From: Sphyrna mokarran
Taxonomy: Eukaryota
NCBI GenBank assembly: GCA_024679065.1
Contig: JAGIQG010000009.1
Coordinates: 86,614,001-86,678,000, forward strand
Reading direction: 5' to 3'
DNA: 64,000 nucleotides
Within the stretch, counting starts at the first letter, position 1; the number at the start of each line of letters is the position of its first letter. The notes below the pieces were generated by a model that worked only from the letters and a program-made list of their open reading frames with translations, had not been told where the DNA came from and did not search any database. The position numbers and the translations under genes are program-made. Below are positions 37,875 through 61,226 of this stretch, piece after piece.

Positions 37875-38039
37875 CTGATTCCCCAGATCCAGATTCTCCA
37901 TTCTCTGATTCTTTTTCGCCTGTCTGTGGCCTTTTCCAAATGGCTATTGCAATTATTCCCAATATAGCAGCCAGTATACTGATTACTGATCCAGCTATAA
38001 TTGCAAGTTGTGAGTGCCCACCACTGCTTTCTGGTACTT
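37875..38039 (-). CDS. MHC class I-like heavy chain exon 5 (connecting peptide, transmembrane, start of tail)
   Basis: Acceptor atgtttttcAG, phase 1. EVPESSGGHSQ-LAIIAGSVISILAAILGIIAIAIW-KRPQTGEKESENGESGSGES, then donor G|GTGAGG. Read-through would stop at 37837..37839 (356 aa total). Confidence 0.8.
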
Positions 38040-38494
38040 CTGAAAAACATTGAAATGATATCAGTAATGTCTTCGTTTATTAGCAGTTCTATGATAGAAT
38101 AAAGACAAGAGGTAACCAGACTATGTCCCAAGATTTAAAGTAAAGTTTTGAAGTCAGTGTCACAGTGTTTCTTATCTGCTGACAGAAAACACCCAATTTT
38201 CATTGAAATTAAGGCTGGTATTATACATTTGCAGCAAGTTAAAAAATGATTGTGGGTCTCAGATTGGAGTAAAAGGTAGTGAAGAGGATAACAGGATCCA
38301 TTGACAGGCAGCAATGAGCACACTACAGGCACGCATCAGCCCCGAGTGCAGAATCTAGGTTCTCACTATACTGCAACTCAGAGGAACATCAGTCAATGCT
38401 GAGGGAATGCTGCACTGTTAGAGACTCAATACTGAGGGAATCCTGTACTTGTCGCAGGGTCAATACTGAGTGTGCTGACTGTAGGAGCATCAAT

Positions 38495-39580
38495 AGAAAC
38501 ATAAAAACTAGAAGCAAAGAGTAGGTCATTTGGCCCTTCAAGCCTGCTTCACCATTCATTTTGATCATGGCTGATCATCAAATTCAATATCCTGGTCCTT
38601 CTTCCTTCCATATCCCATAATCCCTTTAGCCCCTAGATTTCTTCTTGAAATCAGACAACTTTTGGAACTCATTTCATTCTGTGGTAGTGAATTCCACACA
38701 TCCAACACCCTCTGGGTGAAGAAATTTCTCCTTACGTCAGGTCTAAAAGATTTATCCCTTACCCTCAAACTATGACCCCTAGTTCTGGACTCCCCCACCA
38801 TTGAGAGCATTCTTTCTTAATCGAACATGTCTAACCCTGTTAGAATTTTATAAATTTCTGTAAGATCCTCGCTCACTCTTCTAAACTCCAGTGAATATAA
38901 CCCTAACCAACTTAGTCTTTCCATATACAACAGATATGACAACCCAGCAATTTGACAGACCTGTTAAAGTAGCCTGGTAAACCTTCACTGTACTCCCTCT
39001 ATAGCAAGGACATTGTTCTAAGGACACCAAAATTGCATACAATACTCCAGGTGTAACTTCAACAACACTCTATTCAATTGGAGCAAAGTATCCCTATACT
39101 CAAATCTATCTCTATGAAAGCCAACATACCATTTGCCTTCTTTACTGCCTGCTGTACTGTTCGCTCACTTTCAGTGACTGATGCATGAGGACACTGAGGT
39201 CTTACTGAGTATCTATCTCTTTCAACTTACACCCATTCAAAGTAGTAATTTGTCTCCCTAATATTGTTGCCAAAGTGGATAACCTCACATTCATCCGCAT
39301 AAAACTGCATCTGCTATGCTTATGCCCAATCAGCCTATCCAAATTATGCTGAAGCATCTCTGCATCCTTCCCACAGCTCACTCTTCCACCCAACTTTGGA
39401 TCATTTGCAAATTTGGAGGTAATACCTCTAGTTCCCTCTTCCAAATCATTAATATGTAACGTGAACAGTTAGTGTCCTAGCACAGATCCTTGCACATCCC
39501 CACTAATCATTGACTGCCATGTGGAAAAAGACCCATTTATGCCAACTCTTTGCTTCCGATTTGCTAACCAGCTTTCTATC
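38495..39580 (-). mobile_element. Old decayed CR1 inserted into a minisatellite array
   Basis: SKFANDPKLGG, RTRGHSLRV, FFTQRVL remnants and tail. Confidence 0.8.
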
Positions 39581-39589
39581 TGTTTTACG

Positions 39590-40180
39590 ACTCAATGCTG
39601 AGGACATGCTGCACTGTCGGTGGGTCAATGCTGAGGACGTGCTACACTGTCAGTGAATCAATGCTGAGGGAGTGCCGCACTGTCAGAGGACCAATGCTGA
39701 GGGAGTGCTGCATTGTTGGGAACAGTCAATACCAAGGCTCTTCTCCGCTGTGGAAAATCAATTTTGATGGCGTGCTGCACGGTCAGATAGCGTGCTGCAC
39801 TATTAGTTAACCAGTGCTGAGGGAGTGCAGCACTCTGGGAGGGTCAGTGCTGCGGGGATGCAGCGCTGCCAAAGAAACTATGATGATGCAGTGTTGAACC
39901 TTAGCACAACGTTGAAGGAGGGCTGCACTGTCAAAGAATCAGTTCTGACAGAATGCTGCACTGTTGGATGGTCAATGCTGGGGCAGCGCTGTGCTGATGC
40001 AGAGTCAAAGCTAGGGGAGTGAACTGTTAACAGACAGTATCATGTAAGAGTGTAATTAGACAGAGATTTTGTAAGTGTGAACATCTGGTATGCTGGACAG
40101 TGACAATGGGCCTAGTGTTAGGGGTGGCTGGATGGTGAGTGCTGCATTGCCAAAGAGTCAGTGCTGCGCAAGTGCTGCCG
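39590..40180. repeat. 32-bp minisatellite (TCAATGCTGAGGGAGTGCTGCACTGTCRGAGG); further units at 38330-38492
   Basis: More than 10 degenerate units; the array is split by the CR1 at 38495-39580. Confidence 0.85.
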
Positions 40181-40189
40181 TGCCAAAAA

Positions 40190-42990
40190 ACACAGAACAC
40201 AGAACAGTTCAGCACAGTATAGGCCCTTAGGCCCTCAAAGTTGTGCCAAAGTTGTGTCCAAAACCGAGATCAAGCTCTCCCACTGCCTATCATTCTGGTG
40301 TGCTCCATGTGCCTATCCAATAACCGCTTGAAAGTTCCTAAAGTGTCAAAGAATAAAGAACAAAGAACAAAACAACACGAGAAACAGGCCCTTTGGCCCA
40401 ACGAGCCCGTGCCACCACCTTGACGTTCCCACTTCTACCCGTGATCCCTGTCTACGTTTATAGATCTGTGGATTGAAACCAAATTTGAGACAATTTAGGG
40501 AGAATTTGTTCTGCCAGTCAGCCTAACAGCACACCTCGGGATGTGGGAGGAAACCGGAGCACCTGGAGAAAACCCACGCAAGCACAGGGAGAATGCGCAA
40601 ACTCCCACAGACATCGGCCCAAATCCATGTATCTGCACAGCACAGCGATAGTCACTGAGCTGTCATGATGCCCACCAAATGGTCCAGGTCAAGCGTACAC
40701 TAACGATGTGAAGCACTAGGATACTCTCGAAAAATGCAAGAGCAGCCCTCTCACGACCCATCGTGTGTACGCCCCTTGTTAGACAACAAGGTGGACCAAA
40801 GCACCTGTAGAATAAAAACAAATACATCAATATCATCGACTATTTACACACTTCCTAGGGACTCCCAAGGCTCATGATCCCTATTTTAAATCAGTTTTCT
40901 ATACCCCTCCATTCCCATTCTGTTCATGTGCCCATCTAAGTATTTCTTAAATAACTCCAGAGTACCTGCCTCCACCACTTTACTTGGCAGCGCATTCCAT
41001 ACCCCCACCACCCTCTGTGTGAAAAAACTCCCTCTAGCATCCAAATTATACCTTACCCCCCTCACCCTAAGCCCATGACCCCTTGTGCTATTTGAGTCCA
41101 TCCTAGGAAAAAGCTTAACCCTGTTTACTCTATCTATCTCCTTCAAAATCTTGTATACCTCTATCAGATCTCCTCTAAGTCTACGTCTTTCTAAGGAAAA
41201 CAGCCCCAATTTGTCTAACCTCTCCTCGTAACTCAGAACTTCCATACCAGGCAGCATCCTGGTAAACCTCTTCTGAACTCTCTCCAGAGTCTCCACGTCC
41301 TGGACGCAGTATTCCAAATGAGGTCTAACCAACGTTTTATACAACTGCAACATTAAACGCCAGCTCTTGTACTCTATATCCCTTCCTATAAAGGTTAGCA
41401 TACTATATGCTTTCTTCACAACCTTCTCCACCTGTTCTGCCATCTTCAGAGACTTGTTCACCTGCACCCCCAGGTCCCTCTGCGTTTCTATACTCTTAAT
41501 AAGTCTACCCTTTATCATATACTTCTCCCCTACATTCTTTCTCCCGAAATGCATCACTTCACATTTATCAGGATTGAATTCCATCTGCCATCTATCTGCC
41601 CAAGCTACCAGCCTGTCTATGTCCTGCTGCATCGCCTGACAATGCTCCTCACTATCCGCAAGTCCAGCCATCTTTGTATCATCTGCAAACTTGCTGATCA
41701 CTCCACTTACTCCCTCTTCCAAGTCATTTATATATATTACAAATAGAAGAGGTCCCAGTACCGAGCCCTGCGGCACACCACTAGTGACTGACCTCCAGCT
41801 AGAAAAACACCCTTCCACTATTAGTCTCTGTCTCCTATTACTAAGCCAGTTACTTATCCATCTAGCTACCTGTCCTTGTATCCCATGAGCCTTGACCTTT
41901 TCAACTAACCTCCCATGAGGGACTTTGTCAAACGCCTTACTGAAATCCATATAGACAACATCAAGGGCTCGCCCTTCATCCACCGTTTTCGTCACCTCCT
42001 CAAAAAATTCTACCAGATTTGTAAGGCATGACCTCCCTTTAACAAAGTCATGCTGCGTATCCCTAATCAGATTGCAACGCTCTAAGTGCCTATACATCCT
42101 ATATCTCTGTCTGACTCCATTATCACAGCAGGCAGTCCTTTCCACACCCCAACCACTCTGAGTAAAGAACGTACGTTGGGCATCCCTCCTATATCTCCCA
42201 CCATGAACTTTATAGGTATGCCCCCTAATAACAGCTACATTCATCCAAGGAATTAGTCTCTGAATGTCGACTCTATCTATCCTCTTATAAACCTCTATTA
42301 AGTCACCTCTCATCCTCCTCCGCTTTAAAGAGAAAAGCCCAGCTCCCTCAACCTTTCCTCATAAGATATACCCTCCAAACCAGGCAGCATCCTAGTAAAT
42401 CTCCTCTGCACTCTCTCCAATGCTTCCACATCCTTCTTATAATGAGGTGACCAGAACTGCACACAATATTCCAAGTGGTCTCACCAAAGTCCTGTACGGT
42501 TGCAGCATAACCCTACGGCTCTTAAACTCAAACCCCCCTGTTAATAAATGCTATCACACTATAAGCCTTCTTCACGGCTCTATCCACTGGAGTGACAACC
42601 TTCAGAGATCTATGAATATGAACCCCAAGATCCCTGTTCTTCCACATTCCTCAGAACCTTGCCATTGACCCTGTAATCCGCCTTCAAATTTGTCCTACCA
42701 AAATGAATCACCTCACACTTATGGGTTAAACTCCATCTGCCATTTTTCGGCCCAGCTCTGCATCCTATCAATGTCTCTTTGCAGCTTACAAGAGCCCTCT
42801 ACCTCATCCACTACTCCACCAATCTAGATGCCATCAGCAAATTTACTAACCCATCCTTCAACCCCTTCCTCCAAGTCATTGACAAAAGTCACAAATAGCA
42901 GAGGACTCAGCACTCATCCCTGTGGTACACTGCTGGTAACTGGCCTCCAGTCTGAAAATTTTCCCTCCATCACCACCCTCTGGATAATTA
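40190..42990 (-). mobile_element. CR1 3' fragment (40190-40347 plus 42107-42990) split by a nested younger CR1
   Basis: Tail at 40190; sequence resumes at ~42107 with a shared TGTC at both junctions. Confidence 0.8.
40348..42106 (-). mobile_element. Young long-UTR CR1 (RT domain open, 24-nt in-frame deletion) in MHC intron 4
   Basis: Full RT motif set within ORF 40886..42313; FWSPYYRK missing; (AAAGAAC)n tail. Confidence 0.95.
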
Positions 42991-43119
42991 ACTGGCTATC
43001 TCATAGAAGACAATCAGCCAAATTTCCTTCTTTCCCACACCTCCTTACTTTCTTCATGAGCAGACAATTGGTGGTAGAATCAGTGCTGGGGCGGGGACAG
43101 GACCTGATGCCGAGGGTGG

Positions 43120-43525
43120 GAACGATGATGTTTGTGTAGTGGGTGACAATGGGGTGGTTCAGTGGTGATGTTGGGTGTAATATAATGAGATATGATTGGT
43201 TTTGTATAGAGGATAATGATGGGCTTAGTGTAGAGGATGGTGATGTGTAATGGATAATGAAGAGAGTGATGATGAGCTTAGTGTAGGAGATGATGTAGAT
43301 TGTGATAATGGGGGTAGTGTAGGTGATGATGGATAGGGTGATGAAGGGGTAATGATGGTGTAGAGTGTAGGGTGTTACCATAGGAGTGATTTATGGTGCA
43401 GCGATGGGTATAGTTTAGGGGTCGATGATGGGGTTTGCTTGGTGTAATGGTGGGGGAGTGTAGAGGGTGATGATGGGATTAGGAGTGATGATGCAGATAA
43501 TGCAGGAAATGATTATGCGGTTGTG
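43120..43525. repeat. Low-complexity G/T-rich degenerate tandem array (GTGATGATGGG/GTGTAG)
   Basis: Recurrent gtgatgatg and gtgtag motifs with very few C. Confidence 0.7.
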
Positions 43526-43529
43526 TAGC

Positions 43530-44565
43530 ATAGAACATAGAGCATATGATGGGAGATATTCATCGTGGAGTTCGGTGACAAGTGGTGTACCTCAGGGGTC
43601 TGTTTTGGGGCCCCTGCTGTTTGTAATTTTTATAAATGATCAGGATGAGGGTACTGAGGGATGGATTAGTAAATTTGCAGATGACACGAAAGTCGGTGGA
43701 GTGGTAGATAGTGAAGAGGGGTGTTATAGTTTGCAGAGGGACTTGGACAAGTTGCAGAGCTGGGCCGAGAGGTGGCAAATGGAGTTTAATGTGGAAAAGT
43801 GTGAGGTAATGCACTTTGGCAGGAATAATAAATGTGTAGAGTATAGGGCTAATGGTAGGATTCTTAATAGTGTTGATGAACAGAGGGATCTTGGTGTATA
43901 TGTGCATAGATCCCTGAAAGTAGGCAGTCAAATCGATAAGGTTGTTAAGAAGGCATATGGAGTCTTACCTTTTATTGGTAGGGGGATTGAATTTCGGAGC
44001 CGCAACGTCATGTTGCAACTGTACAAAACTCTAGTGCGGCCGCACTTGGAGTATTGTGTGCAGTTCTGGTCCCCACATTATAAGAAAGATGTGGAGGCAT
44101 TGGAGAGGGTACAGAGGAGGTTTACCAGGATGTTGCCTGGTATGGAGGGCAGGTCTTATGAGGAGAGGCTGAGGGATTTGAGGTTGTTTTCGTTAGAAAG
44201 GAGGCGGCTAAGAGGGGACCTAATCGAGACATATAAGATGATTAGAGGTTTAGATAGGGTGGACAGTGATAGCCTTTTTCCTAGGATGGAAAAAGCTAGC
44301 ACGAGGGGACACAGCTTTAAATTAAGGGGTGATAGTTATAGGACCGATATCAGAGGTAGGTCTTTACCCAAAGGTGGTTCGGGAGTGGAATGCCCTGCCT
44401 GCAGCAGTTGTAGATGCGCCAAGTTTGGTGGCGTTTAAGAGGTTAGTTGATAATTATATGGAAGAGAAGGGATGGTTTAGTTTGGAGGGGCATTGCTTTT
44501 TATATTGGTTGGCGCAACATCGAAGGCCGAAGGGCCTGTTCTGTGCTGTAATGTTCTATGTTCTA
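43530..44565 (+). mobile_element. Young CR1 3' fragment
   Basis: [24 protein letters not shown]; ATGTTCT tail; tail-to-tail with the next element. Confidence 0.95.
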
Positions 44566-46220
44566 TTACAGTGCAGTACAGGCCTTCGGCCCTCGATGTT
44601 GCGCCGGCCAGTGGACCCTCTAACCTAAACTATTCCAATATCATCCATATGCCTATCCACCGACCATTTGAATGCCCCCAAAGTAGGCGAGTCCACAACT
44701 GCTGCAGGGAGGGCATTCCACGCCCTCACCACCCTCTGGGTAAAGAACCTGCCTCTGACATCCATCCTATAACTACCACCTCTTAATTTAAAGTTATGTC
44801 CCCTCGTGCTGGTCATCACCATCCGAGGAAAAAGGCTCTCACACTCCACCCTATCCAGTCCTTTGATCATCTTATACGCCTCAATTAGGTCACCGCGTAA
44901 CCTTCTTCTCTCTAATGAAAATAACCTCAGGTCCCTCAGCCTTTCCTCATAAGGCCTTCCCACCATACCAGGCAACATCCTGGTAAACCTCCTCTGCACC
45001 CTTTCCAATGCTTCCACATCTTTCTTATAATGCGGCGACCAGAACTGTACGCAATACTCCAAGTGCGGCCGCACCAGAGTTTTGTACAGTTGTAACATAA
45101 CCTCACGGCTCCTAAATTCAATCCCTCTACCAATAAAAGCTAACACACCGTACGCCTTCTTAACAACTTTATCAACCTGGGTGCCAACTTTCAAAGAGCT
45201 ATGTACTTGTACCCCAAGATCCCTCTGCTCGACAACACTATTAAGGGTCCTTCCATTAGCCCTATATTTCATATGCCTGTTATTCCTACCAAAGTGAATC
45301 ACCTCACACTTATCCGTATTGAATTCCATTTGCCACCTCACGGCCCAGCTCTGCAACCTATGTCCCTCTGCAAACTGTAACATCCATCCTCGCCGTCTAC
45401 AACTCCCCCCACTTTGGTATCATCAGCAAATTTACTAATCCAACCCTCTACACCCTCATCTAGGTCATTTATAAAAATGACAAACAGCAGTGGCCCTAAA
45501 ACAGATCCTTGAGGTACACCACTTGTAACTGCACTCCAGGTTGAATATTTCCCATCAACCACCACCCTCTGTCTTCGATCAGCTAGCCAATTCCTAATCC
45601 AAACTGCTAAATCACCTTCAATCCCATGCATCTGCACTTTCTGCAGTAGCCTACCATGGGGAACTTTATCAAACGCTTTGCTAAAATCCATATACACTAC
45701 ATCAACTGCCTTACCCTTATCTACCTCTTTGGTCACCTCCTCAAAAAACTCAATAAGGTTTGTGAGGCACGACCTACCCTTCACAAAACCGTGCTGACTA
45801 TCCCTAATCAATTTATTTCTCTCTAGATGCTTATAAATCCTATCCCTTATAATTCTTTCCAAGACCTTGCCCACAACAGAAGTCAGGCTCACCGGTCTAT
45901 AATTTCCAGGATGGTCCCTACTCCCCTTTTTGAACAAAGGGACAACATTTGCCATCCTCCAGTCTTCCGGCACTATACCTGTAGCTAACGACGACATGAA
46001 GATCAAAGCCAAAGGCTCTGCAATCTCCTCTCTAGCCTCCCAGAGAATCCTAGGGTAAATCCCATCTGGCCCAGGGGACTTATCAATTTTCATACCCTCA
46101 AGATTCGCTAACACCTCCTCCTTATGAACCTCAATCCTGCCCAGTCTACAACCTGGTATCGCAGTATTCTCCCCGACAACATTGTCTTTCTCCTGCATGA
46201 ATACTGACGAAAAAGCATGC
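44566..46220 (-). mobile_element. Young CR1 with nearly complete RT domain (single frameshift near 45360)
   Basis: [30 protein letters not shown]; ORFs 45338..46531 and 44625..45383 overlap in different frames. Confidence 0.95.
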
Positions 46221-46234
46221 CATGGGGAGGTCAT

Positions 46235-46980
46235 ATTTAAAAACGGAAAAACATTATGAAAGTAAGACAGCAGCAAACATGAAAACTGGTTGTACATATC
46301 TATATAAACTTTTGCAAAGAAAAGATCGACAAAAACAAATGTAGGCCCCTTACAGTCAGAACTGGGAGAATTGATAATGGGGAACAAAGAAATAGCTGAG
46401 GAACTAAATTTGGAATTTGCTTCTGTCTTCACAAAGGAAGACATGAATAACGTACCAGAATTTCTGAGAGAACTACATTTTCGTGAGGAGTTAATGGAAT
46501 TCAGCAGTAGTAGAGAAATGGTTTTGCACAAATTGATGAGATTGCCAATAATAGAAAGACAGATGTTTACTTTAAAGTGTGTAAATTGAGAATGGTGGAT
46601 ATTCAGTGAGACCTTGGTGTCCTCCTACATCAGTCACTGAAAGTAAGTGTGCAGGTACTGCAGGCAGTAAAGAGAGCAAATGGTATGTTGGCCTTATTGG
46701 GGAAAGGGTTTAGTACAGGAATAGAGATGTCTTGCTGAAATTGGTCAGGACATTCATGAGGCTACACCTGCAGTATTGTATGCAACTTCAAAATCCTTAT
46801 CTGAGGAAGGATGTCTCTGCCATACAGCGGAAATAGCAAAGGTTTGCCAGGTTGATTCCTAGGATGTCATATGAGGAGATTAAAAAAAACTGGTTAGGGT
46901 TACGTTCACTATAATTTAGAAGATTCAGAGAGGATCTCAAAGAAATTTTTAAAATTCTAAGAATTAGACAGGGTAGTCTA
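46235..46980 (+). mobile_element. Old decayed CR1 fragment
   Basis: [17 protein letters not shown] and degenerate downstream RT motifs. Confidence 0.7.
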
Positions 46981-48540
46981 AGGAGTGATAATGCAGATAG
47001 TGTAAGGTGTGATAATGAGAATTATGTAAGGAATTATGATGTGATTTGTCCAGCGGGTTCCAATAAGAGAAGTTCACTTTGTTTTTCACATCTTATTGAG
47101 AATGACTGCCACAGATAAAAACAAAATAAAATGAGAAAAAAAAAGAGGGATGCTCAAAGACCAAAACTGGAAGGAAAACCATTCTTGTATTCTTCCATCC
47201 AGATTTTGGTGTTCAAGTACAATCTGTGAGAAATTAAATCATTGATTGTGTTTACTGACATAGTTGACTGGAGAACTGAAAAAAGCTGTACTGAATTAGT
47301 CTCAAAATACGTGAATTCACAATAGAACTTTTCTATCAATTTTGTTCCAACCTTCTGTTCAGTCTTTATGAAGATTAAAGTCCTCCATGATTAGTACATT
47401 ACTTTAGTTAGAGGACTACAAATTTTATCATACCGATCCGCCCAACTACATAAATTTTGTTTGGGGCCCAGAAACATCTCCAATTGGCTCTTCTCTGATT
47501 CTTGCTATTCCTAATCTCCCCCCAATACTGCTTCCACTTCTGAGCCAAGATTCATTCTTTCTTTCATGTGTCTGTAATTCTTTACTACATGGGCTCCTCC
47601 TCCTTTTCCATTCTGCCTGTCTTTCAAAACGTGGGGTACCATGCAATATTTATTTCCTGATATTGATCATCTGATAACCATGTTTTTATAATTGTGATTA
47701 TATCAAATCCATTTATCTCTATTTGTTTTGCTAGTTCCTTCATCCTTTTACAAAGGTTTTGTGTGTACTATTCCATAAATGAAGTCTATACACTGTTGCA
47801 TGATGGCTGTTAAACAGTCTTGTCACCTTCTGTCCAACCTGTTTGTCATAAGCCAAACCGCCTCAACTCCTCTCTCTTTCTAAATTTCCCTTCACCCGCT
47901 CGGTCCCACAATTTGCAGACAAGACACACACCGCTATTTCTCTCAAATTTTAGTTATTTATTTGATTTGTTAACTATTTGTTCCCAATTCAGTAACATAA
48001 TAGCATTTTTAGGCTCTGAGTTTGAAAACAGAGAAAGAACACTCATTACAGATGCCAATCAAAAATACTCTGTCCTCTAACTGCTGAGTCCTCAGGCAGG
48101 CATGCTTTTATGAAGGATCCAAGCCATTGTAATATTAAATGTGCATTTGTCAGCATAGTATTTAAGAATCCCATTACCCAAATTGAAGATTTGGGGCAAT
48201 GGGATTGAAAACATTGCACTTTCAGTCACCTCAAAGAACTGAGTGATGTTAACCACTTGTTTGATAAATTTACGTGAACAACTATATAACGCTGTAAACC
48301 TATTCAAAATTGGTTTCCAATTCAAAGAACAAAGAACAAAACAGCACAGGAAACAGGACCTTCGGCCCAACGAGCCTGCGCTGCCACCCCGATGTTCCCA
48401 CCTCTACTCGCGATCCCTGTCCATGTTTATAGATTCAAAATTGGACTGTGCAAAATACACAGCCTCAGAGTTTCCTTGTCTCCCTCTGTCATTACATGTT
48501 CTTTGACACATGCACAGACACATCCAGTTCGATTGCTTAC

Positions 48541-48819
48541 CCCACTGATGGATCTTGGGCTCTGCCAGGCTGCTGTGTTCAATTTGACAGGAATATTGAT
48601 TCTCATCTCCAGCATTAATTTCAATCACTTTCTGGATCTGATGGGTGTCATTGTGGTTCGGTCGAACCCCTGAGGATAGTGTCTCAGACATTACCTCTCC
48701 ATTCCTTAGCCAAGTAACCTCAATGTCTGCAGGATAAAATCCAGTAACCAGGCAGGAGAGAGTGAACAGCTTATATTGACCAATGGGCTCATTTCTCGTG
48801 ATGAAGACATCAGGCTGAA
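48541..48819 (-). CDS. MHC class I-like heavy chain exon 4 (alpha3, Ig C1-set)
   Basis: 279-nt phase 1-1 exon: VQPDVFIT...LSCLVTGFYPADIEVTWLRNG...GVRPNHNDTHQ...YSCQIEHSSL...W. Donor G|GTAAG. Confidence 0.92.
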
Positions 48820-49004
48820 CTGAAATGGAATGAGCGAAAGCACAAACAATATAATAGATATTAAATGGAATGGGATTTTTACAGTATCTTCATTACCATG
48901 TTAATGTAAGATTACTTCTGACACTAGTAAATAAACAAAAATAGAATGGTTTAATTGATCAGTGAAGTTAGATCAGAATGTGGGATTAAAACTGAAATAA
49001 ATAC

Positions 49005-49280
49005 CTTTCTTATTGAGATATTCTTTTCCAAAATATAGACGTGATTTTAAACGTTCAACAAGTTCTACTTCCATCAACCATTTCCAAAACGTGTTCCAGG
49101 ATTCATCAAAATCCCATTTCTCCTTAGTCTTCACTGCATTGTGATGTGTTGCGACCCATCTCATTCTGTCTGATTCTAAACTAATATAGTCCTTTCCATC
49201 AAATCCAACACTCATCGATCTCTTAATGGAGCCATCTTCACTGACCTCAACGTTCCTTATCCATTGCAGAACGTGTATTC
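49005..49280 (-). CDS. MHC class I-like heavy chain exon 3 (alpha2 domain, cysteine-free)
   Basis: 276-nt phase 1-1 exon with AG/GT ends. GIHVLQW...EDG...GFDGKDYISL...WVA...AVKTKEKWD...LKSRLYFGKEYL aligns to class I alpha2 motifs. Confidence 0.9.
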
Positions 49281-50352
49281 CTGTCATTGATCAGAGAAAA
49301 AGATTAGATTGTAAATGGAAAAGGGTTCTTATTTCATTAGTGGATTTCTCAATGGGTTCAGTATTGTCATATATTATAATATTGGACACATTTCTGGGCT
49401 CAGTATTACAGGAATAAAATGCATTCTGGCAACAATATTACAATCTATTACAATAAATCCATCCATGAGCTCAGTATTACAGGAATTTTTCTGTGGGTTC
49501 TGTATTATATAATAGGTATTTCTATGGGTTCAATAATATTTTTCTTAATTTTATAGAATGTGGACATCACTGACTGTGCAAGCATTTATTGCCCATCCTG
49601 AGTTTCCCTTGAGTAGGTTTGGTGGATTGTCTTTTTGAGCTGCAGTAGTCCTGGAAGTACAGGTACATCCACAGTGGTGTTTGGGTGGGAATTTCAGGGG
49701 TTAACCAGAGATAATGAAGGAATGCAACGTACTTCCAAGTTCGGATGGCGAGTAACTTGGAGCAGAACCTCCAGGTAGTGGTTCCCAGGTATCTGCTGCC
49801 CTTGCCATTCTGGATGGTAATGGTCATGGGTTTAGCAGGTGTTCCCGAAGGAACCTTGATGAATTCCTGCATTTTGTAGACGGTACACATAGCTGCTACT
49901 GTTCATCAGTGATGGACGGAATGATGGAAGGGATAACAATTAAGTGGTGCTTTGTCCTGGATAGTATGAAGCTTCTTGAGTGTTATTGGAGCTGCATTCA
50001 TCCAGTCAACTGAAGAGTATTCCATCACACTCTTGGCTTGTAGGTTTTGGGTAGTCAGATCAAATACTCGGTGCAGGGTCCCTAGCCTCTAACCTGCTCT
50101 GGTCGCCATATTATTTATATGGCTAATCAAGTTCAGTTTCTGGATCAATAGTCAACCCCCAGCATATCGGTAGTGTGAGATTTGCGATGATAACATCATT
50201 CAACGTCAAGGGGCGACGGTTAGATTTCTTCTTGTTTGGGATGGTCATTATCTGGCCCTTACGTGATACAAAATGTAACTTGTCATTTATCAGCCCAAGC
50301 CGGGATATTGCCTAGATCTTGCTGCATTTGGACATGAACTCCTTCAGTATCT

Positions 50353-50555: not shown

Positions 50556-50589
<34 letters not shown>

Positions 50590-51885: not shown

Positions 51886-52494
51886 AGTGGGAAAAATCAC
51901 AAGGATGACTACATGACATGTAAAAATGTTACCTGGGAGAGAGACATTAAGCAGGCACTGACTTTTAGCACAGACAGCTACTTGAAACTAAGAACATGTA
52001 GGACAGACAGTTATTTAAAGTTAAACATGCAAGAATCAGATACTGCAGGAAGCCAGTAGAGAACTTGAGGCACTTCTAAGATAAGGATAGACCAAGGACA
52101 ATAAGGAGATTAGCCATAAATGGGAACGGAAATACATAAATGCAGGAAAACCAATTACTGTATGTATAGACGGAATTAAGTTATTAATAGTCACTGATAG
52201 AGGAAACATATCCATTCTATGAAACAATGCAATGTTAAATGTCAATGTCTGTATATCTCTGGTTGTAACGATGTGTTGAATATCGATCCTACTCAACTAT
52301 AACCATGTGTTAAATGGCTAATGTCCAGACTATCCATTGTCTGAAAGGTATAAAAATAAACCGCTCCTATTGTATTATTGAGAGAAGGTAGCTGCCCATA
52401 CTGCAGAGTGCCAATGTCTTTTCTCCACAAAGCTTTGTTAAATGGAACTGTTTGTTGCACTCCAAGTCTGACTCCGAAGTGGTAATTTCCCACA
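51886..52494 (+). mobile_element. 3' LTR of ERV remnant 2
   Basis: Follows purine tract aagagagg. Imperfect inverted termini (a)gtgggaaa...tttcccaca. Overlapping TATAAA/AATAAA at ~52349-52360. Confidence 0.65.
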
Positions 52495-54130: not shown

Positions 54131-54424
54131 ATGGCACAGTGGTTAGCACTGCTGTCTCACAGCGCCAGGGATCTAGGTTCAATTCCTGGCTTGGGTCACT
54201 GTCTATGGAGTCTGCATGTTCTCCCTGGGTCTGTGTGGGTTTCCTCCAGGTGCTCCAGTTTCCACGCATAGTCCAAAGATTTGAAGGTTAGGTGGATAAG
54301 TTATGCTAAGGTCTCCTTCAGGGTACCCGAACAGGTGCTGGAGTGTGGCAACCAGGGGATTTTCACAGTAACTTCATAGCAATGTTAATGTAAGCCTACT
54401 TGTAACACTAATAAATAAACTTTA
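54131..54424 (+). mobile_element. tRNA-derived SINE with alternative tail
   Basis: Well-preserved head, core and ...aataaataaacttta tail. Confidence 0.85.
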
Positions 54425-55539
54425 AAATAAACTCTACCGAGGAAATTACCTTCTCAACTGACAAGATTCTCATCTCCACTTTTTCCAATATCTTTAGGAT
54501 GTCTCATAGTTCATCAACATGAGCATCAACAATCTGTTGTGGAGCCGAGACCATTGTCCACAAATTCCCCCAGAATGGTAGCAATCAACTCATCACCAAT
54601 GGCATTGCTGAAGTGTGGACACAATCACCAGTGAAACCGCCACTGCAAACTGAGTCCCTCACTGGCTGTATCCGACTACCTCAATCAAACAAGGAACTCC
54701 CAGACTTAACTTGGCTCCCCACTGCCAAAATTTAACCAGAATCTTCCAAGAACATAGCACAGATTACACACATCAGGATCAAATAATTGTGTGTTGAACG
54801 TCAGGATAAAACAAAGGTTTAAAAAAATGAGTATACCAGCACTCGCAAAAATGCAGCCTCTCGCACATTTACCTCACTTGACTCCACCTCCTTGCCCATA
54901 TTTGAGACTTCTTGGCATCCAGAGTCAATTTGAGGACTCACAAGGTAGAACATAGAACATAGAAAATACAAAAAGTACAACACAAACAGGCCCTTTGGCC
55001 CACAAGTTGCACCGATCATATCTCTACCTACTAGGCTTACCTATAACCCTCAATCCTACTAAGTCCCACGTACTCATACAGAATGAGGTAATCCTTCCTG
55101 ATTACCAATGTGCCACCGCCAGCTCTGCTAGATTTGTCCTGCTGATGGGATAGGACATATCCAGGAATGATCATGATTGTGTGTAGGACTTTGTCTGTAA
55201 GATAGACTCTGTGAACATCAGGCAGTTACTTCACTGTCTATAGGACAAGTCTTCAAATTGTGGCAGTAATCCCCAAATGTCAGGAGGTTTACTAGGTTAT
55301 TTAATATTAACAACATTGCTGTGAGTCTGTGAGCAGGCCAAACTAGATAAGAATGGCAGGCTTCCTTCCCTAAAGGACATTTGTGAACCAGTGGTATTTT
55401 ACTTCAATCGAGAATGGTCCATGATATTTTATCCAGTTTTAAAGAAAATTTACTATTCAAATCTGGATCCCCAGAGTATTGCCCTGGGTCTATGCATTAC
55501 TAGTTCAATGACAATTGCACTGCACTACTGCCTCCCCAT

Positions 55540-56280
55540 TAGAACATAGAACATAGAACATTACAGCACAGAACAGGCCCTTCGGCCTTCGATGTTGTGC
55601 CGACCAAAATAAAAAGCAATGCCCCTCCAAACTAAACCATTCCCTTCTCTTCCATATACTTATCAATTAACCTCTTAAACGCCACCAAACTTGGCGCATC
55701 TACAACAGCTGCAGGCAGGGCATTCCACTCCCTAATCACTCTTTGAGTAAAGAACCTACCTCTGATATCCGTCCTATAACTCATACCCCTTAATTTAAAG
55801 CTGTGTCCCCTCGTGCTAGCTTTCTCCATCCTAGGAAAAAGGCTATCACTGTCCACCCTATCTAAACCTCTAATCATCTTATATGCTTCAATAAGATCCC
55901 CTCTTAGCCGCCTCCTTTCTAACGAAAACAACCTCAAATCCTTCAACCTCTCTTCATAGGACCTGCCCTCCATACCAGGCAACATCCTGGTAAACCTCCT
56001 CTGTACCCTCTCCAATGCCTCCACATCTTTCTTATAATGTGGGGACCAGAACTGCACACAATACTCCAAGTGCGGCCGCACTAGAGTTTTGTACAGTTGC
56101 AACATGATGCTGCGGCTCCTAAATTCAATCCCCCTACCAATAAAAGCTAAGACTCCATATGCCTTCTTAACAACTTTATCCACTTGACTGCCTACTTTCA
56201 GGGATCTATTGACACATACACCAAGATCCTTCTGTTCCTCAACACTATTAAGAGCCCTACCATTAGCCCTATACTCTACA
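55540..56280 (-). mobile_element. Young CR1 3' fragment in MHC intron 2
   Basis: 183-aa ORF nearly identical to 23450..24001. Confidence 0.95.
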
Positions 56281-56772
56281 GTAATGACTTGTAATATACA
56301 TTACAGTAATGACTTGATGGTATTGGTGGCCTGGGGATATGCCAGGCCATTAAGTTACAGATTTTCATCGAGTACAATTCTATAGCTGATGGCCCATAGT
56401 AACTCATGGGTCTTTCCCATTTGGCATGATGGTTGTACTATAAAGCACAGTGGAAGATATCCTTAGCTGAATACCAGTCTTGGTTTCTACAAGGATCGTA
56501 CTATAATCACACCTACCAATACTGTCATCAGATGCATCTGCACATCATGCCCAGATTTCTGAGGCCCTGCACCTTCTTTATAATTGTACATTTCATTTTA
56601 TATTGTTGTTCATTCTCCAAAAATACATCAGCTCACATATTTAGCATTAAATTTAATCTGCTATTTGCCCATCCATTCTATTGGCCGTTGGTCTTTATCC
56701 TTTTGAAGTCTATCCTGAATCTCCTCACTGTTCACAATACTCCCAAGTTTTGCGTCATTTGCAAGCTTTAAA

Positions 56773-58017
56773 ACAGAGAACAAAGAACAAAACAGCACGG
56801 GAAACAGGCCCTTCGGCCCAACGAGCCCGCGCCGCCACCCCGATGTTCCCACCTCTACCCCCGATCCCTGTCCATGTTTATAGATCTATGGATTAAAAAC
56901 GAAATTTGAGACAATTTAGGGAGAATTTGTTTTGCCAATTAGCCTAAGAGCACATCTTTGGGATGTGGGAGGAAACCGGAGCACCCGGAGAAAACCCACG
57001 CAAGCACGGGGAGAATGCGCAAACTCCCACAGACACAGGCCCAAATCCATGTATCTGCACAGCACAGCGATAGTCACTGAGCTGTCATATTGCCCATCAG
57101 ATGGTCCAGGTCAAGCATACACTAACGATGTGAAGCAGTAGGATACTCTCGAAAAAGATCCAAGAGCAACCCTCTCACGACCCATTGCGTGTATGCCCCT
57201 CGTTGGACAACAAGGTGGACCGAAGCACCTGTAGGATAAAAACAAGTACATCAATATCATCATCTATTTACACACTTCCCAGGGACTCCCAAGGCTCATG
57301 ATCCCTATTTTAAATCAGTTTTCTATACCCCTCCATTCCCATTCTGTTCATGTGCCCATCTAAGTATTTCTTAAATAACTCCAGAGTATCTGCCTCCACC
57401 ACTTTACTTGGCAGCGCATTCCATACCCCCACCACCCTCTGTGTGAAAAAACTCCCTCTAGCATCCAAATTATACCTTACCCCCCTCACCCTAAGCCCGT
57501 AACCCCTCATGCTATTTGAGTCCATCCTAGGAAAAAGCTTAACCCTGTTTACTCTATCTATCCTCTTCAAAATCTTGTACACCTCTATCAGATCTCCTCT
57601 AAGTCTACGTCTTTCTAAGGAAAACAGTCCCAATTTGCCTAATCTCTCCTCGTAACTCAGACCTTCCATACCAGGCAGCATCCTGGTAAACCTCCTCTGC
57701 ACTCTCTCCAGAGTCTCCACGTCCTTCCGGTAGTAAGGCGACCAGAACTGGACGCAGTATTCCAAATGAGGTTTAACCAGCGTTTTATACAACTGCAACA
57801 TTAAAGGCCAGCTCTTGTACTCTATACCCCTTCCTATAAAGGCTAGCATACTATATGCTTTCTTCACAACCTTCTCCACTTGCTCTGCCACCTTCAGAGA
57901 CTTGTTCACCTGCACCCCCAGGTCCCTCTGCGTTTCTATACTCTTAATAGGTCTATCCTTTATCATATACCTCCCTTCTACATTCTTTCTCCCGAAATGG
58001 ATCACCTCACATTTATC
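56773..58017 (-). mobile_element. Young long-UTR CR1 3' fragment in MHC intron 2
   Basis: 238-aa ORF 57310..58026, long UTR, (AAAGAAC)n tail; closely similar to 40348-41570. Confidence 0.95.
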
Positions 58018-58669
58018 AAAAAACATTTTCCATTTGCACCCAAGCCTAGGTCATTAACGTATATCAGGAAAATTAATGATCCAAAGACCCAGGATCTCCA
58101 CTGTATTGCACGGTTATCTGAATAAAATCATTTGGGCTGACATGTCAGGATGAGAAACTGATTAAAAAGAAGTATTTCAGATCCTGGGGCTTATATATAC
58201 TGATATAGATCACAATTTTCCACATCCCACTTAGATGTTTCATTTTGGTAGAGACTGCCCGCCATTGACTGGTGGCAGGATCTTCTGTCCCTCCGCTGGT
58301 AAAAGGGTCTCATCATTAGGAAACCCACAGCAGGGATTCATCATCGGTGGGACCAGATGATTCCCGTCCAGTAAGAGCGGCTGAAGAATTCCACTCAGTG
58401 TGCCAAAGCAATACAAAAGATAAACCTTTACAAAATAACTAATTCACACTCAACTGGAGTACTCTGTTCAATTCTGGGCACAAATTATAGGAAAGATATT
58501 AGAGAGGGTGTAGAAAATGTTTACAGAACACTTTTTTCAGTCACATGGAATAATTGGACCTGGGTGTATCTATGTGCATTGATCATTGAAGGTGACAGGA
58601 TAAGTCGCGAGAGCAGATAATAAAACGTAAAGTATTCTGGGCCTTGTTAATAGAAGCATAGAGTACAAG

Positions 58670-58999
58670 AATCTTAGAATTCCTACAGTGCAGAAAGAGG
58701 CCATTCAGCCCATTGAGTCTGCACCGACCACAATCCCACTCAGGCCCTACCCCCATATCCACCCACTAATCTCTCTAACTTATACATCTCAAGACACTAA
58801 GGGCAATTTTAGCATGGCCAATCAACCTAACTCACATATCTTTGGACTGTGGGAGGAAACCGGAGCATCCAGGGGAAAATCATGCAGACACGAGGAGAAT
58901 GAGCAAACTCCACACAGACAGTGACCCAAGCTGGGAATTGAACCTAGGTCTCTGGAGCTGTAAAGCAGCAGTGCTAACCACTGTGCTACCGTGCCACCC
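58670..58999 (-). mobile_element. tRNA-derived SINE with CR1-type tail
   Basis: Reverse-complement match to 34668-34990. Confidence 0.82.
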
Positions 59000-59550
59000 T
59001 ATAAAAATAAGGAGGTTGTGCTTAACTTACACATTAGTTAAACCTCAGCTGCAATATTATGTACAGTTCTGGGTGTCACACGATAGGAACAATGTGAAAA
59101 CAATGGACAGAGTGCAAACGAGGTTTACAAAGAATGGTTCCAGTGATGAGAAACTTCAGTTATGAGAACAGGTTGGACAGGTTGGGACTGTTCATCTGGG
59201 AGAGAGAAAAAAAACTAACAGGAGAGTTGATAGAGCTATTCAAACCATGAGGGGCTGGATAGAGCAGAAAGGGAGAAACCGCTCCCCTTTGTAAAAGGGT
59301 CAAGAAGGAGAGGACACAGACTTAAGGTGATTTTCAAAAGAAGAAAACTATTTCATGCAGCAAGTGGTTGGAGTCTGGAATGTACTGCCTGGAAATGTAG
59401 TTAAAATATGATTCAGCTGAGGTACTTAAGAAGGCATTATCTGAATAAAAACAATGTTCAGGGGTACAGAGGATGGTACTAAGTCATGAGGTTCCTTTAG
59501 AGAGACGGTATGATATGATGGGCCAAATAATCTTCTTCTGCACGCTAACA
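58990..59550 (+). mobile_element. Old decayed CR1 3' fragment (5' part from ~58550, interrupted by a SINE)
   Basis: LVKPQLQYYVQFWV, DRVQTRFTK remnants. Confidence 0.7.
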
Positions 59551-59789
59551 ATTCTATTATTTTGTGAATTAGGCTTGTTCTCCTCACAGAAGAATGAGAG
59601 AAAAGAAAGTTGCGCTTTGATAGAGATGCACAAAACCTAGAAGGAGTCTAGATACATGGAGAAAGTGCTTCCACTGGTGGAAGGATGAAACCAACACCAA
59701 TTTTAAGGCAAAGCAACCAATAGCAAACACAAGGAAAAATCTGGGCCAGCCATGGCTACATTATTGCAGTCTTGTATTTCAATCACAAA

Positions 59790-60130
59790 GTTTTGAATTC
59801 AAGTTCCCTCTAGGGCTTGAGCTCAAAAATCCAGGTTGACACTCCAGCACTGAGTGTGATGCACTGCTGGAGATACCACTTTTGGATGAAATGTTAAACC
59901 AGGCCTCATCTGCCTACTCAAATGGATGTAAAAATCTGATGGCAGTATTTTGAAGTCGAACAGGGGAATTAACCCAAAATTTAACCCTGAATCAACATCT
60001 ATGACAAGATTATCTGTCGTGATCACATTATTGTCTGTGCCAATAATTCCAGCATTTGTTGCCATATTTCCTGCACTTCAAAAGTATTTAATTAACTGTA
60101 AAGTGCTCTGAGACATCTGGTGCTCATGAA
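59790..60130 (+). mobile_element. Old Deu-domain SINE (SacSINE1/AmnSINE1-like)
   Basis: ggatgaaatgttaaaccaggcctcatctgcc...ggatgtaaaaatc...ggcagtattttgaag...caggggaatt resembles the Deu domain as recalled. Confidence 0.6.
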
Positions 60131-60585
60131 CATCTTCATTTATGTGCCAAATCTTTCTTTTTAAAAACTTTGTTACAAAGTGTATAGTTTGAGTCTTCCT
60201 GAGTATATTGGAGGCTAATACAATCAAAGCTTTCAAAAGGAATTAAGATCATTAACTCAACAGAAAAAGCCAATATGACTACGTCAAAATGGTCAGGGAG
60301 TGGGAATTAGCAAAGTTGTTCTTGCTTTGAGCTGATTCTGACACAACAGGCTGAATAACTTCCTTCTCTGTTGCAATCAATCCATGATTGCCACACTTCT
60401 GGTATATAATTAGCCTGTCCACCATACTGGGTGCATGGGTATCTGTTTTATACATATATGACAGATGTGGCTAGGATGGTCCAAGCACTGTACACCTCTG
60501 TACACTTGCAGTAGAACTGTGGTTAGGTAAATATCTGATATCAGTTAAGTAGACAGTTAATGAGATCCAGAATCACTAATCTTAC

Positions 60586-60846
60586 CGGATGTTTGGTTTG
60601 TCCCCTTCATTATTGTCCTCAGATTTTCCTTAGCCATGGCAGACAGTTTATTTCCTTGGTTTGTAAGATATTCCCAGTACTCCCCATCAAAAGAGTCTTC
60701 CATCCACTTCTGCCGGGAGACTGTACGGTGGGTACTACTGTCATAAGCTGTCACTGGCACGCCATTGATCTTACTTACACCAAAATACTCAGGTAACTCA
60801 GCAATGCCAGATGTTGCCACAAACACCGTGGTAATGGAATTACTGT
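60586..60846 (-). CDS. MHC class I-like heavy chain exon 2 (alpha1 domain)
   Basis: Acceptor tgtttttcgtacAG, 261 nt, donor G|GTAAG. DSNSITTVFVATSGIAELPEYFGVSKINGVPVTAYDS...RQKWM...EYWE...NQTSG carries alpha1 motifs (PE, YDS, RQxWM, EYW, N86 glycosylation site NQT). Confidence 0.9.
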
Positions 60847-61174
60847 CTGTACGAAAAACAACAAAAGAGACAAGTTCATTTACATTTATAAACATCACCA
60901 CCGATCAGGTGAAGTTAATTCACAAATCCCAGAAACATAAAAACACAGAGACAAAAGAAGGAAAGGGGGGGAGAGAGAGAGAAAGAAAGCAACAGAGAGA
61001 AATAGATAGAGGAACAGAGCCAGGCGGATCCAGGAAATTAGATACAAAAATCTCTATCAGTTTAATATTGCGACACATATTCGGGTTGGGACACGCGTTG
61101 TTTTCCTAATTTACTGCATTGATCCTGAGCTGTAACAATGACAGAGGGAACGGGAGGCTGAATTCAGCCCTTAC

Positions 61175-61226
61175 CGGAAGAGATGCAGGAAAAACACAAA
61201 GAGATGTAGAAAAGGACCAGCAACAT
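61175..61226 (-). CDS. MHC class I-like heavy chain exon 1 (signal peptide MLLVLFYISLCFSCISS)
   Basis: ATG at 61226, hydrophobic 17-aa leader plus 1 nt, donor G|GTAAG. TATAAA about 40 nt upstream. Confidence 0.85.

What the first reader, a model, noticed from the sequence alone, without database searches (positions are those of the whole stretch)
37875..61226. Apparently intact nonclassical MHC class I gene with a disulfide-free alpha2 domain and a half-dismantled peptide groove
Seen in sequence: five open exons with GT-AG phase-1 introns encode leader, alpha1, alpha2, alpha3 and TM. The alpha2 exon contains no cysteine. By manual alignment, C101 is V (WIRNVEV) and C164 is L (EVELVERL). N-terminal peptide anchors are mostly replaced (Y7>T, Y159>L, W167>R, Y171>R; Y59 kept), and R/Y84 is G. 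The C-terminal anchor set T143/K146/W147 (TKEKW) and the N86 glycan site are retained. The alpha2 helix is Trp/Phe-rich (WNTFWKWL). Established: the C101-C164 bond is nearly universal in class I folds, and sharks have several nonclassical lineages (UBA to UFA). Inference: the paired loss of both cysteines in an otherwise undamaged gene suggests selected remodelling toward a non-peptide or open-ended ligand rather than decay. I cannot assign the lineage.
Basis: partly seen in the sequence, partly recalled or inferred. Interest (0 to 1): 0.82.

Follow-up and report, generated by a model that had tools for sequence, protein, structure and literature searches.

The report
Shark nonclassical MHC class I gene
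This is an intact, transcribed shark MHC class I-like gene whose missing alpha2 disulfide bond is real but is shared by a whole large shark gene family, so the gene is an ordinary member of an unusual family.

Summary
On the minus strand lie leader, alpha1, alpha2, alpha3 and TM exons with AG/GT borders and phase-1 introns. They give Pfam MHC_I and C1-set matches. Contigs of three runs carry the exact alpha2-alpha3 splice, one with no mismatch.

The trait is not special to this gene. The gene's orthologue is a Mustelus asterias RefSeq protein, 91-92% identical per ectodomain exon. It belongs to a multigene family found in 13 shark species. In that family position 101 is Cys in 0 of 80 aligned members, against 65 of 65 other class I proteins.

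The family is most likely the published UEA lineage. I infer this; no named reference sequence and neither primary paper could be read. Ligand and function are untested, and dN/dS was not computed. This scan had already noted, unchecked, a cluster of class I genes lacking the alpha2 disulfide elsewhere in this genome (s1-886598). Verdict: new member of a known kind, moderate interest.

The parts
61175..61226 (-). Exon 1: start codon and leader peptide (52 nt, ends in phase 1)
   Evidence: ATG at 61226 and GT donor after 61175. The leader is 76% identical to that of Mustelus P0162.
60586..60846 (-). Exon 2: alpha1 domain (261 nt)
   Evidence: AG/GT borders. Pfam MHC_I 1.1e-6. 92% identical to P0162. 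Pairs with P0162 in the exon tree, support 99/94.
49005..49280 (-). Exon 3: alpha2 domain (276 nt), no cysteine; V at position 101, L at position 164
   Evidence: 92% identical to P0162. Exon tree support 100/99. Contigs of X1, X2 and X17 stop matching at 49281-49283, at the acceptor.
48820..49004 (-). Intron 3 (185 nt), shown to be removed in contigs
   Evidence: Joint 48819|49005, skipping 185 nt, with ends CT..AC on the + strand (GT..AG on the minus strand). It is present in X1 (0 mismatches on both sides), X2 and X17.
48541..48819 (-). Exon 4: alpha3 Ig C1-set domain (279 nt), both Ig cysteines present
   Evidence: Pfam C1-set 2.8e-16. 91% identical to P0162. Exon tree support 100/97.
37875..38039 (-). 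Exon 5: connecting peptide, transmembrane helix and first part of the cytoplasmic tail (165 nt)
   Evidence: AG/GT borders and phase 1. 84% identical over 38 residues to P0162.
34094..34308 (-). Exon 6: acidic cytoplasmic tail and stop codon.
   Evidence: AG acceptor at 34310-34309; in phase with exon 5; TAA at 34096-34094. 41 of 48 residues identical to the P0162 tail. No Pfam family matches it.
33979..34140 (-). Out-of-frame remnant of the distal tail that is coding in Heterodontus and Scyliorhinus relatives
   Evidence: The tblastn match of P0001 residues 349-399 lies in another frame than the exon 6 reading frame. That frame carries an internal stop.
38040..48540 (-). Intron 4 (10.5 kb), filled with LINE-type reverse-transcriptase ORFs
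   Evidence: ORFs at 40886-42313, 43467-44438, 44625-45383 and 45338-46531 read as reverse transcriptase (judged by eye from the translations, not scanned against Pfam).

Best explanation
The locus is one intact, transcribed, six-exon gene for a nonclassical MHC class I heavy chain. By exon arithmetic the product is about 415 residues: leader, alpha1, alpha2, alpha3, TM and an acidic cytoplasmic tail.

Family and lineage. The gene is the orthologue of a Mustelus asterias RefSeq protein (P0162). It belongs to a large class Ib multigene family found here only in sharks, most likely the lineage published as UEA. Within that family it sits in a conserved, low-copy, long-tailed sublineage seen in Heterodontus, Scyliorhinus, Mustelus, Carcharodon, Cetorhinus, orectolobiforms and Heptranchias.

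The missing disulfide. The lack of the C101-C164 bond is an old, fixed trait of the whole family. Val is nearly invariant at position 101, and position 164 is mostly a hydrophobic residue. It is not a lesion of this gene.

Shown here:
- exon structure and domain identity;
- removal of intron 3 in contigs;
- orthology to P0162;
- the family-wide cysteine census;
- a confident class I fold predicted for the orthologue.

Inferred, not shown:
- The chain pairs with beta2-microglobulin and reaches the membrane as a normal class I-shaped molecule. Hydrophobic packing of V101 against L164 would replace the disulfide.
- Four of the five residues checked that hold the peptide N terminus are replaced (T7, L159, R167, R171; Y59 is kept), and position 84 at the C-terminal end is G. 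The alpha2 helix carries an aromatic W-x-x-F-W-x-W run. So it probably does not hold peptides by both termini as classical molecules do.
- It probably binds a different, likely hydrophobic, ligand, or none, for recognition by innate-like T cells or NK-type receptors.
For: Gene structure and domains.

Cysteine and anchor residues: one search gives HMMER alignments to PDB class I chains. One search gives all 13 positions checked against classical Triakis UAA (P0058).

Transcription:
- The exact intron-3 joint is in contigs of X1 (0 mismatches over 141 + 200 nt), X2 and X17.
- Depth is 0-0.5 in the first 240 nt of intron 2 in those runs. X18 covers all 30 bins.

Orthologue: P0162 is 92/92/91% identical to alpha1/alpha2/alpha3. 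Each window exon pairs with it at 99/94, 100/99 and 100/97 support. The tail exon is 85% identical.

Family: 100 of the 108 hits come from 13 shark species. The next best hits are two ray proteins at 36-37% identity.

Family-wide trait:
- Cys at 101 in 0 of 80 family rows against 65 of 65 others; Cys at 164 in 6 of 80 against 62 of 65.
- The same picture by BLAST HSPs: 0 Cys at 101 among 93 covered HSPs of at least 45% identity.

Sublineage: P0162 lies in a starred 17-row clade, SH-aLRT 98.

Fold: in the AlphaFold2 model of P0162 the 10-residue blocks of the ectodomain have pLDDT 91-98. The best Foldseek matches are chicken BF2 at TM 0.92 and shark class I 6lup at 0.90.

Literature passages: sharks have two expanded class Ib families. 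UBA is derived from UAA; UEA is older. UDA, UFA and UGA are single copy (PMC12562908; PMC10751288).
Against: - The name UEA is inferred. No sequence carrying that name was reachable; all family hits are RefSeq 'F10 alpha chain-like'. The two primary papers are not held.
- Selection was not measured. No orthologue DNA could be fetched, so there is no dN/dS.
- The runs are only guessed to be RNA, and contigs show presence, not level.
- Only the intron-3 joint is shown directly for this gene. The alpha1-alpha2 junction is inferred from contigs that end at the acceptor. The alpha3-TM and TM-tail junctions rest on the orthologue's annotation. The loose ends at 48541 come from paralogues: by my eye about 23 of 30 letters match the window's TM exon start.
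- The P0162-type copy has a longer end branch than the conserved Mustelus copy P0156 (0.15 against 0.036). The distal tail is out of frame in the window. Both would fit relaxed constraint.
- The structure model was made for the orthologue alone, without beta2-microglobulin or ligand, and says nothing about what is bound.
Confidence: 0.8

Rival explanations
1. The gene is a young duplicate on its way to becoming a pseudogene. It is still open and still transcribed, but no longer under protein-level constraint.
For: - Longer end branch of P0162 (0.15) than of the conserved Mustelus paralogue P0156 (0.036).
- The distal cytoplasmic tail, coding in Heterodontus and Scyliorhinus relatives, is frameshifted and carries a stop in the window.
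- Its contigs have depth of about 32-37, while paralogue contigs in the same run reach hundreds. Contig depth is a poor measure of expression.
- No dN/dS was obtained.
Against: - Six open exons with canonical splice sites.
- An exact spliced contig.
- The Mustelus orthologue is also open, at 91-92% identity in every ectodomain exon.
- The states that mark the sublineage (V/I101, L164, R167, R171, T143, K146, W147, Y59, N86) are all kept.
Confidence: 0.07
2. The gene belongs to a shark class I lineage that has not been described, distinct from UAA through UGA.
For: - No named reference sequence was available, so the placement in UEA is untested.
- The long-tailed, low-copy sublineage forms its own starred clade.
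Against: - The family is multicopy, found only in sharks here, and far from classical UAA (about 36% identity to Triakis UAA). That fits the only expanded, old shark family named in the passages read.
- The 13 shark genomes that hold it are annotated and several have been surveyed for MHC. An overlooked family of this size is unlikely.
Confidence: 0.08
3. The gene belongs to one of the other described lineages: UBA, UCA, UDA, or the CD1-like UFA/UGA.
For: - The alpha1 exon's best solved-structure match is 9ch4_A at 5.7e-8. That is an unnamed 'Ig-like domain-containing protein' and might be one of the new shark or ray class Ib structures.
- MR1 chains also rank high for alpha1.
Against: - For the whole orthologue 9ch4_A is only rank 7, level with bird class I.
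- 9ch4_A is closest to a ray protein (P0248, 5.4e-54) and keeps both alpha2 cysteines in that alignment.
- UDA, UFA and UGA are single copy and UBA is UAA-derived, unlike this divergent multicopy family.
- The MR1 ligand-binding lysine (identified as K43 from recall) aligns with T in the orthologue.
Confidence: 0.05

Closest known systems
Shark nonclassical class I lineage UEA (Almeida et al., J Immunol 2021; paper not held, content recalled from its abstract; passages on UEA read in PMC10751288 and PMC12562908)
   Same: - A multicopy family found only in sharks, covering both galeomorph and squalomorph species.
- Far from classical UAA.
- Most residues that bind the peptide termini are replaced, and the groove looks hydrophobic.
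[quoted passage not shown] This fits the MHC linkage reported for all shark class Ib genes.
   Different: No difference is shown. Membership could not be tested against named sequences. Whether the family-wide loss of C101, or the conserved long-tailed sublineage, is described in the paper is unknown to me.
Classical shark class I UAA (Triakis scyllium alleles, cluster of P0058; solved shark class I 6lup)
   Same: - The same exon-per-domain layout and the same predicted fold (TM 0.90 to 6lup).
- The N86 glycan site, the alpha3 Ig cysteines, and Y59, T143, K146 and W147 are kept.
   Different: - About 36% identity.
- No alpha2 disulfide.
- Y7, R84, Y159, W167 and Y171 are replaced.
- A long acidic cytoplasmic tail.
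MR1 and CD1 (mammalian class I-like molecules for small metabolites and lipids)
   Same: - Nonpolymorphic-type class I-like molecules with remodelled, aromatic or hydrophobic grooves.
- MR1 chains are among the better sequence and fold matches.
   Different: - From recall, both keep the alpha2 disulfide.
- The MR1 Schiff-base lysine aligns with T in the orthologue.
- No evidence of orthology, and no ligand data.
9ch4_A, an unnamed solved 'Ig-like domain-containing protein' closest to ray class I-like proteins
   Same: It is the best solved match to the alpha1 exon, with a shared stretch around the start of the alpha1 helix.
   Different: - It keeps both alpha2 cysteines.
- Over the whole chain it is no closer to the family than bird class I.
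- Its identity is not known to me; no paper naming it was found.
Xenopus XNC (mhc1-uba) multigene class Ib family
   Same: An expanded nonclassical class I family in an ectotherm, linked with innate-like T cells in the review read (PMC12562908).
   Different: A separate origin in amphibians. I did not examine its sequences here.

Membership tests
MHC class I heavy chain | alpha1/alpha2 superdomain that matches Pfam MHC_I | tested here: met
   alpha1 exon 1.1e-6 (28.8 bits, cut-off 28.3); alpha2 exon 1.2e-13. Orthologue P0162 1.2e-24.
MHC class I heavy chain | Membrane-proximal C1-set Ig domain with its cysteine pair, followed by a TM segment | tested here: met
   C1-set 2.8e-16. Both Ig cysteines are visible in the alpha3 translation. 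The TM helix is predicted in the orthologue model.
MHC class I heavy chain | One exon per domain, phase-1 introns | tested here: met
   Intron 3 removal is seen in contigs.
MHC class I heavy chain | C101-C164 disulfide in alpha2 (nearly universal, not strictly defining) | tested here: not met
   V and L at these positions. Among the 65 non-family class I rows, Cys occupies 101 in 65 and 164 in 62.
MHC class I heavy chain | Association with beta2-microglobulin | not testable with these tools
   Only a single chain can be modelled here.
Classical class I (UAA) | Conserved residues that bind the peptide termini (7, 59, 84, 143, 146, 147, 159, 167, 171) | tested here: not met
   Four of nine are kept (Y59, T143, K146, W147) and five are replaced. 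Triakis UAA (P0058) has all nine.
Shark UEA lineage | Multigene family with several genes per shark genome | tested here: met
   100 cluster representatives from 13 shark species; the counts include isoforms. Within a species nearly all lie on the same long contig.
Shark UEA lineage | Present in sharks, not detected in rays or chimaeras (recalled from the abstract) | tested here: met
   The best non-shark hits are two ray proteins at 36-37% identity that keep C101 and C164. The search is word-seeded, so distant members could be missed.
Shark UEA lineage | Groups with named UEA reference sequences in a tree | not testable with these tools
   No protein carrying the name was returned. The primary papers are not held.
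Shark UEA lineage | Linkage to the MHC | not tested
   Only unchecked scan notes bear on this. They place a classical class I gene 0.8 Mb away and class II genes about 3.5 Mb away on the same piece. The window itself holds no other MHC exon.
CD1-like UFA/UGA | Single or low copy; CD1-like binding region (PMC12562908, PMC10751288 passages) | tested here: inconclusive
   The gene's family is multicopy. The only candidate structure, 9ch4_A, is not specially close and keeps both cysteines. However, its lineage is unknown.
MR1 | Ligand-binding lysine in alpha1 (K43, recalled) | tested here: not met
   In the HMMER alignment of P0162 to an MR1 fusion chain, the MR1 lysine aligns with T. The window has T at the same place.

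The most novel reading that the evidence does not exclude
The whole shark family has replaced C101 by a nearly invariant valine. That would make it a rare large class I family that keeps a classical-looking fold, glycan site, alpha3 and TM but has no alpha2 disulfide, and this may not have been pointed out in print.

Within the family, the long-tailed sublineage would be an ancient low-copy gene, kept at 78-87% identity across shark orders, with a fixed L164/R167/R171 and W-rich alpha2 helix that serves one particular non-peptide ligand.

The window's gene would then be a triakid-side duplicate that is changing its groove (T7, L159) and shedding its distal tail.
Probability: 0.2. Interest if true: 0.55.

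Novelty: new member of a known kind. Interest (0 to 1): 0.35.

Why it matters
Sharks are the oldest living vertebrates with an MHC, and the function of their expanded class Ib families is unknown.

This gene shows that the missing alpha2 disulfide is a fixed, ancient trait of a whole family rather than damage to one copy. A class I fold can therefore dispense with a bond that is otherwise almost universal.

The conserved low-copy sublineage, with its long acidic tail and aromatic alpha2 helix, is a sensible first target for ligand and structure work. For this one locus the result is mainly a clean annotation: six exons, an orthologue and transcripts.

Tried and rejected
- **Paralogous exons in the window.** tblastn of the five exon peptides against the window found only the exons themselves. 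There is a single gene here.
- **NLR or death-fold module downstream (scan note s1-887074).** Pfam found nothing in the tail exon or in the two ORFs tested in 32348-34046. The downstream exon is the conserved cytoplasmic tail of the orthologue.
- **UFA/UGA or MR1 kinship.** This was suggested by the alpha1 hit to 9ch4_A and MR1. Whole-chain ranking, the cysteines of 9ch4_A and the missing MR1 lysine argue against it.
- **Lineage names from databases.** Three cluster look-ups returned only automatic RefSeq names, plus Triakis 'MHC class I antigen' for the classical control.
- **Literature.** Searches found no open text on alpha2 cysteines in shark class Ib, and none naming 9CH4. Passages of PMC10751288, PMC12562908 and PMC9586880 were read. 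The word searches in PMC10751288 and PMC9586880 found no mention of cysteines. The supplementary gene lists of PMC10751288 might settle the lineage, but supplements are closed. I make no claim that the trait is unpublished.
- **dN/dS.** Not done. The orthologue's DNA could not be fetched, and the differences listed by read laying are truncated and mix paralogues.
- **Joined model.** The joined spliced model was neither built nor searched. Exons were searched one by one. The natural Mustelus protein P0162 served for whole-chain searches, alignment and folding.
Full report
**What is there.**
- leader, 61226-61175;
- alpha1, 60846-60586;
- alpha2, 49280-49005;
- alpha3, 48819-48541;
- TM, 38039-37875.

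Each is bounded by AG and GT, and all introns are in phase 1. Searched one by one, the exon translations give Pfam MHC_I (alpha1 1.1e-6, alpha2 1.2e-13) and C1-set (alpha3 2.8e-16). No second copy of any exon lies in the window.

**The residues.**
The alpha2 exon has no cysteine. HMMER alignments to solved class I chains align V with C101 and L with C164, without gaps nearby. In alignment A1 the classical Triakis scyllium class I protein (P0058, identified) has Y7, Y59, R84, N86, C101, T143, K146, W147, Y159, C164, W167 and Y171. The window has T, Y, G, N, V, T, K, W, L, L, R and R at those positions. The alpha3 exon keeps both Ig cysteines.

**A sixth exon.**
The best relative of all exons is P0162, a Mustelus asterias RefSeq protein of 393 residues. 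Identity is 92% in alpha1, 92% in alpha2, 91% in alpha3 and 84% over 38 residues of the TM exon. Its tail continues past the TM exon into a stretch that matches window 34308-34094. That stretch has an AG acceptor, is in phase with the TM exon's GT donor, and ends at a TAA at 34096-34094. It shares 41 of 48 residues with P0162.

The gene therefore spans 61226 to 34094. The six coding parts add up to 1248 nt, or 415 codons plus stop.

Further downstream, 34140-33979 still resembles the distal tail of Heterodontus and Scyliorhinus relatives. It lies in another frame and has a stop. No Pfam family matches the tail. I found no support for the NLR or death-fold idea of scan note s1-887074.

**Transcripts.**
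Twenty-two runs were listed, none on record as RNA. I laid four of them on 48000-49800.
- A joint 48819|49005 skips exactly the 185-nt intron 3, with GT..AG on the minus strand. It is present in one contig each of X1, X2 and X17.
- The X1 contig has no mismatch over 141 + 200 nt. The X2 and X17 contigs differ at 7 and 11 places, so they come from related species.
- Contigs of the same three runs stop matching at 49281-49283, the alpha2 acceptor.
- Depth in the next 240 nt of intron 2 is 0-0.5 in these runs, while X18 covers every bin.

These runs therefore behave as RNA, although that is a guess on record, and contigs cannot show level or absence. The alpha3-TM and TM-tail junctions are not shown for this gene. 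The loose ends at 48541 in X2 and X17 resemble the TM exon start only in part, and come from paralogues.

**The family.**
A full HMMER scan with the alpha2 exon found 320 proteins at E up to 0.001, 5 of them at E up to 1e-30. The closest single-domain hits (53-75% identical) are shark proteins. A search with the Heterodontus protein P0001 (residues 18-290) gave 108 hits. Of these, 100 come from 13 shark species of both galeomorph and squalomorph orders, all named automatically 'class I histocompatibility antigen, F10 alpha chain-like' or similar. The next best hits were two ray proteins at 36-37% identity.

In a tree of 88 alpha1-alpha2 segments, P0162 lies in a starred clade of 17 rows with one or two members per species. 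In per-exon trees each window exon pairs with P0162 (99/94, 100/99, 100/97), and the alpha1 pair lies inside that clade (99/97). P0162 has a longer end branch (0.15) than the other Mustelus member of the clade, P0156 (0.036).

**The disulfide is missing in the whole family.**

| Position | Family rows (80, at least 45% identical to P0162) | Other class I rows (65) |
|---|---|---|
| 101 | V 72, I 2, A 1, gap 5; Cys 0 | Cys 65 |
| 164 | L 27, F 19, Y 7, C 6, S 6, D 5, G 4 and others | Cys 62 |

These counts come from alignment A1 (145 rows). A census by BLAST HSPs agrees. Among HSPs of at least 45% identity, none of the 93 that cover position 101 has Cys there, and 10 of 100 have Cys at 164. Among HSPs below 45% identity, 143 of 188 have both cysteines.

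N86 is invariant in the family (80 of 80) and W147 nearly so (78 of 80). The sublineage shares L164, R167, R171, T143, K146, W147 and Y59 across Heterodontus, Heptranchias and Mustelus. These are old, kept states rather than recent damage. Counts on an unrooted set cannot tell which cysteine went first.

**Which lineage.**
Passages of two open papers say that sharks have two expanded class Ib families. UBA is derived from classical UAA; UEA is more ancient. UDA, UFA and UGA are single copy, the last two CD1-like and unpublished (PMC10751288; PMC12562908). A divergent, multicopy family found only in sharks fits UEA and none of the others.

This is inference. The two primary papers are not held, and what I know of them is recalled from abstracts. 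No protein with a lineage name was returned. Supplements that may list the genes are closed. The solved chain 9ch4_A, best for alpha1 alone, is only rank 7 for the whole orthologue. It is closest to a ray protein and keeps both cysteines.

**Fold.**
AlphaFold2 on P0162 with alignment A1 gives pLDDT of 91-98 in the 10-residue blocks of the ectodomain and the usual class I secondary structure. Foldseek ranks chicken BF2 first (TM 0.92), with shark class I 6lup at 0.90 and MR1 at 0.87-0.88. The fold is therefore predicted with confidence without the disulfide.

**Reading.**
The gene is an ordinary, working-looking member of an unusual family. How it works is inferred:
- It forms a class I-shaped membrane glycoprotein.
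- Val 101 and Leu 164 pack where the disulfide used to be.
- Of the N-terminal peptide anchors only Y59 is left.
- Part of the C-terminal set (T143, K146, W147) is kept, perhaps for structural reasons, since it is conserved in the family.
- Aromatic residues line the alpha2 helix.

A non-classical, probably hydrophobic ligand is the most likely use, but it is untested. The main rival, early pseudogenisation of a duplicate, is not excluded, because no dN/dS could be computed.

**Context from the scan (unchecked notes).**
The same sequence piece is said to hold a classical class I gene 0.8 Mb before the window and class II genes about 3.5 Mb beyond it. It is also said to hold, 4.7 Mb beyond, a tandem cluster of class I genes lacking the alpha2 disulfide (s1-886598). 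These notes agree with MHC linkage and with a family-wide trait. I did not test them.

Noticed in passing
window 7703-8698 (+): An intronless 331-residue ORF of the rhodopsin-type GPCR family (Pfam 7tm_1, 7.1e-21). A shorter, similar-looking fragment lies at 18263-18538; Pfam found nothing in it.
   Followed up: partly
window 33979-34140 (-): The distal part of the cytoplasmic tail is coding in Heterodontus (P0153) and Scyliorhinus (P0154). In the window it is recognisable but out of frame, with a stop just before the conserved S-L-L end. The annotated Mustelus orthologue also ends early.
   Followed up: partly
proteins P0171, P0156, P0174 (Mustelus, Stegostoma): In the per-exon trees the alpha1 of P0171 groups with P0174 in one main branch (98/95). 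Its alpha2 groups with P0156 in the long-tailed clade (99/90). This looks like exon exchange between paralogues.
   Followed up: no
alpha3 exon, window 48541-48819: Alpha3 is 81-88% identical to many paralogues whose alpha1 is only about 50-69% identical. This suggests homogenisation or much stronger constraint on alpha3 within the family.
   Followed up: no
window 48305-48426, 48854-48975, 49525-49646: Three short stretches in introns 4, 3 and 2 have very high contig depth in all four runs, up to 1.2 million in X18. They are probably interspersed repeats.
   Followed up: no
window 40886-46531 and 61824-62546: LINE-type reverse-transcriptase ORFs fill intron 4 (judged by eye). An endonuclease-type ORF lies just upstream of the gene (Exo_endo_phos, 2.7e-13).
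   Followed up: partly
protein P0241: One family member (228 residues) comes from a 1146-nt contig of a JGI metagenome and carries no name. Shark material seems to be present in that sample.
   Followed up: no
PDB 9ch4_A: This solved 'Ig-like domain-containing protein' is closest to a Mobula class I-like protein (P0248, 5.4e-54) and keeps both alpha2 cysteines. It may be one of the new elasmobranch class Ib structures. No paper naming it was found.
   Followed up: partly
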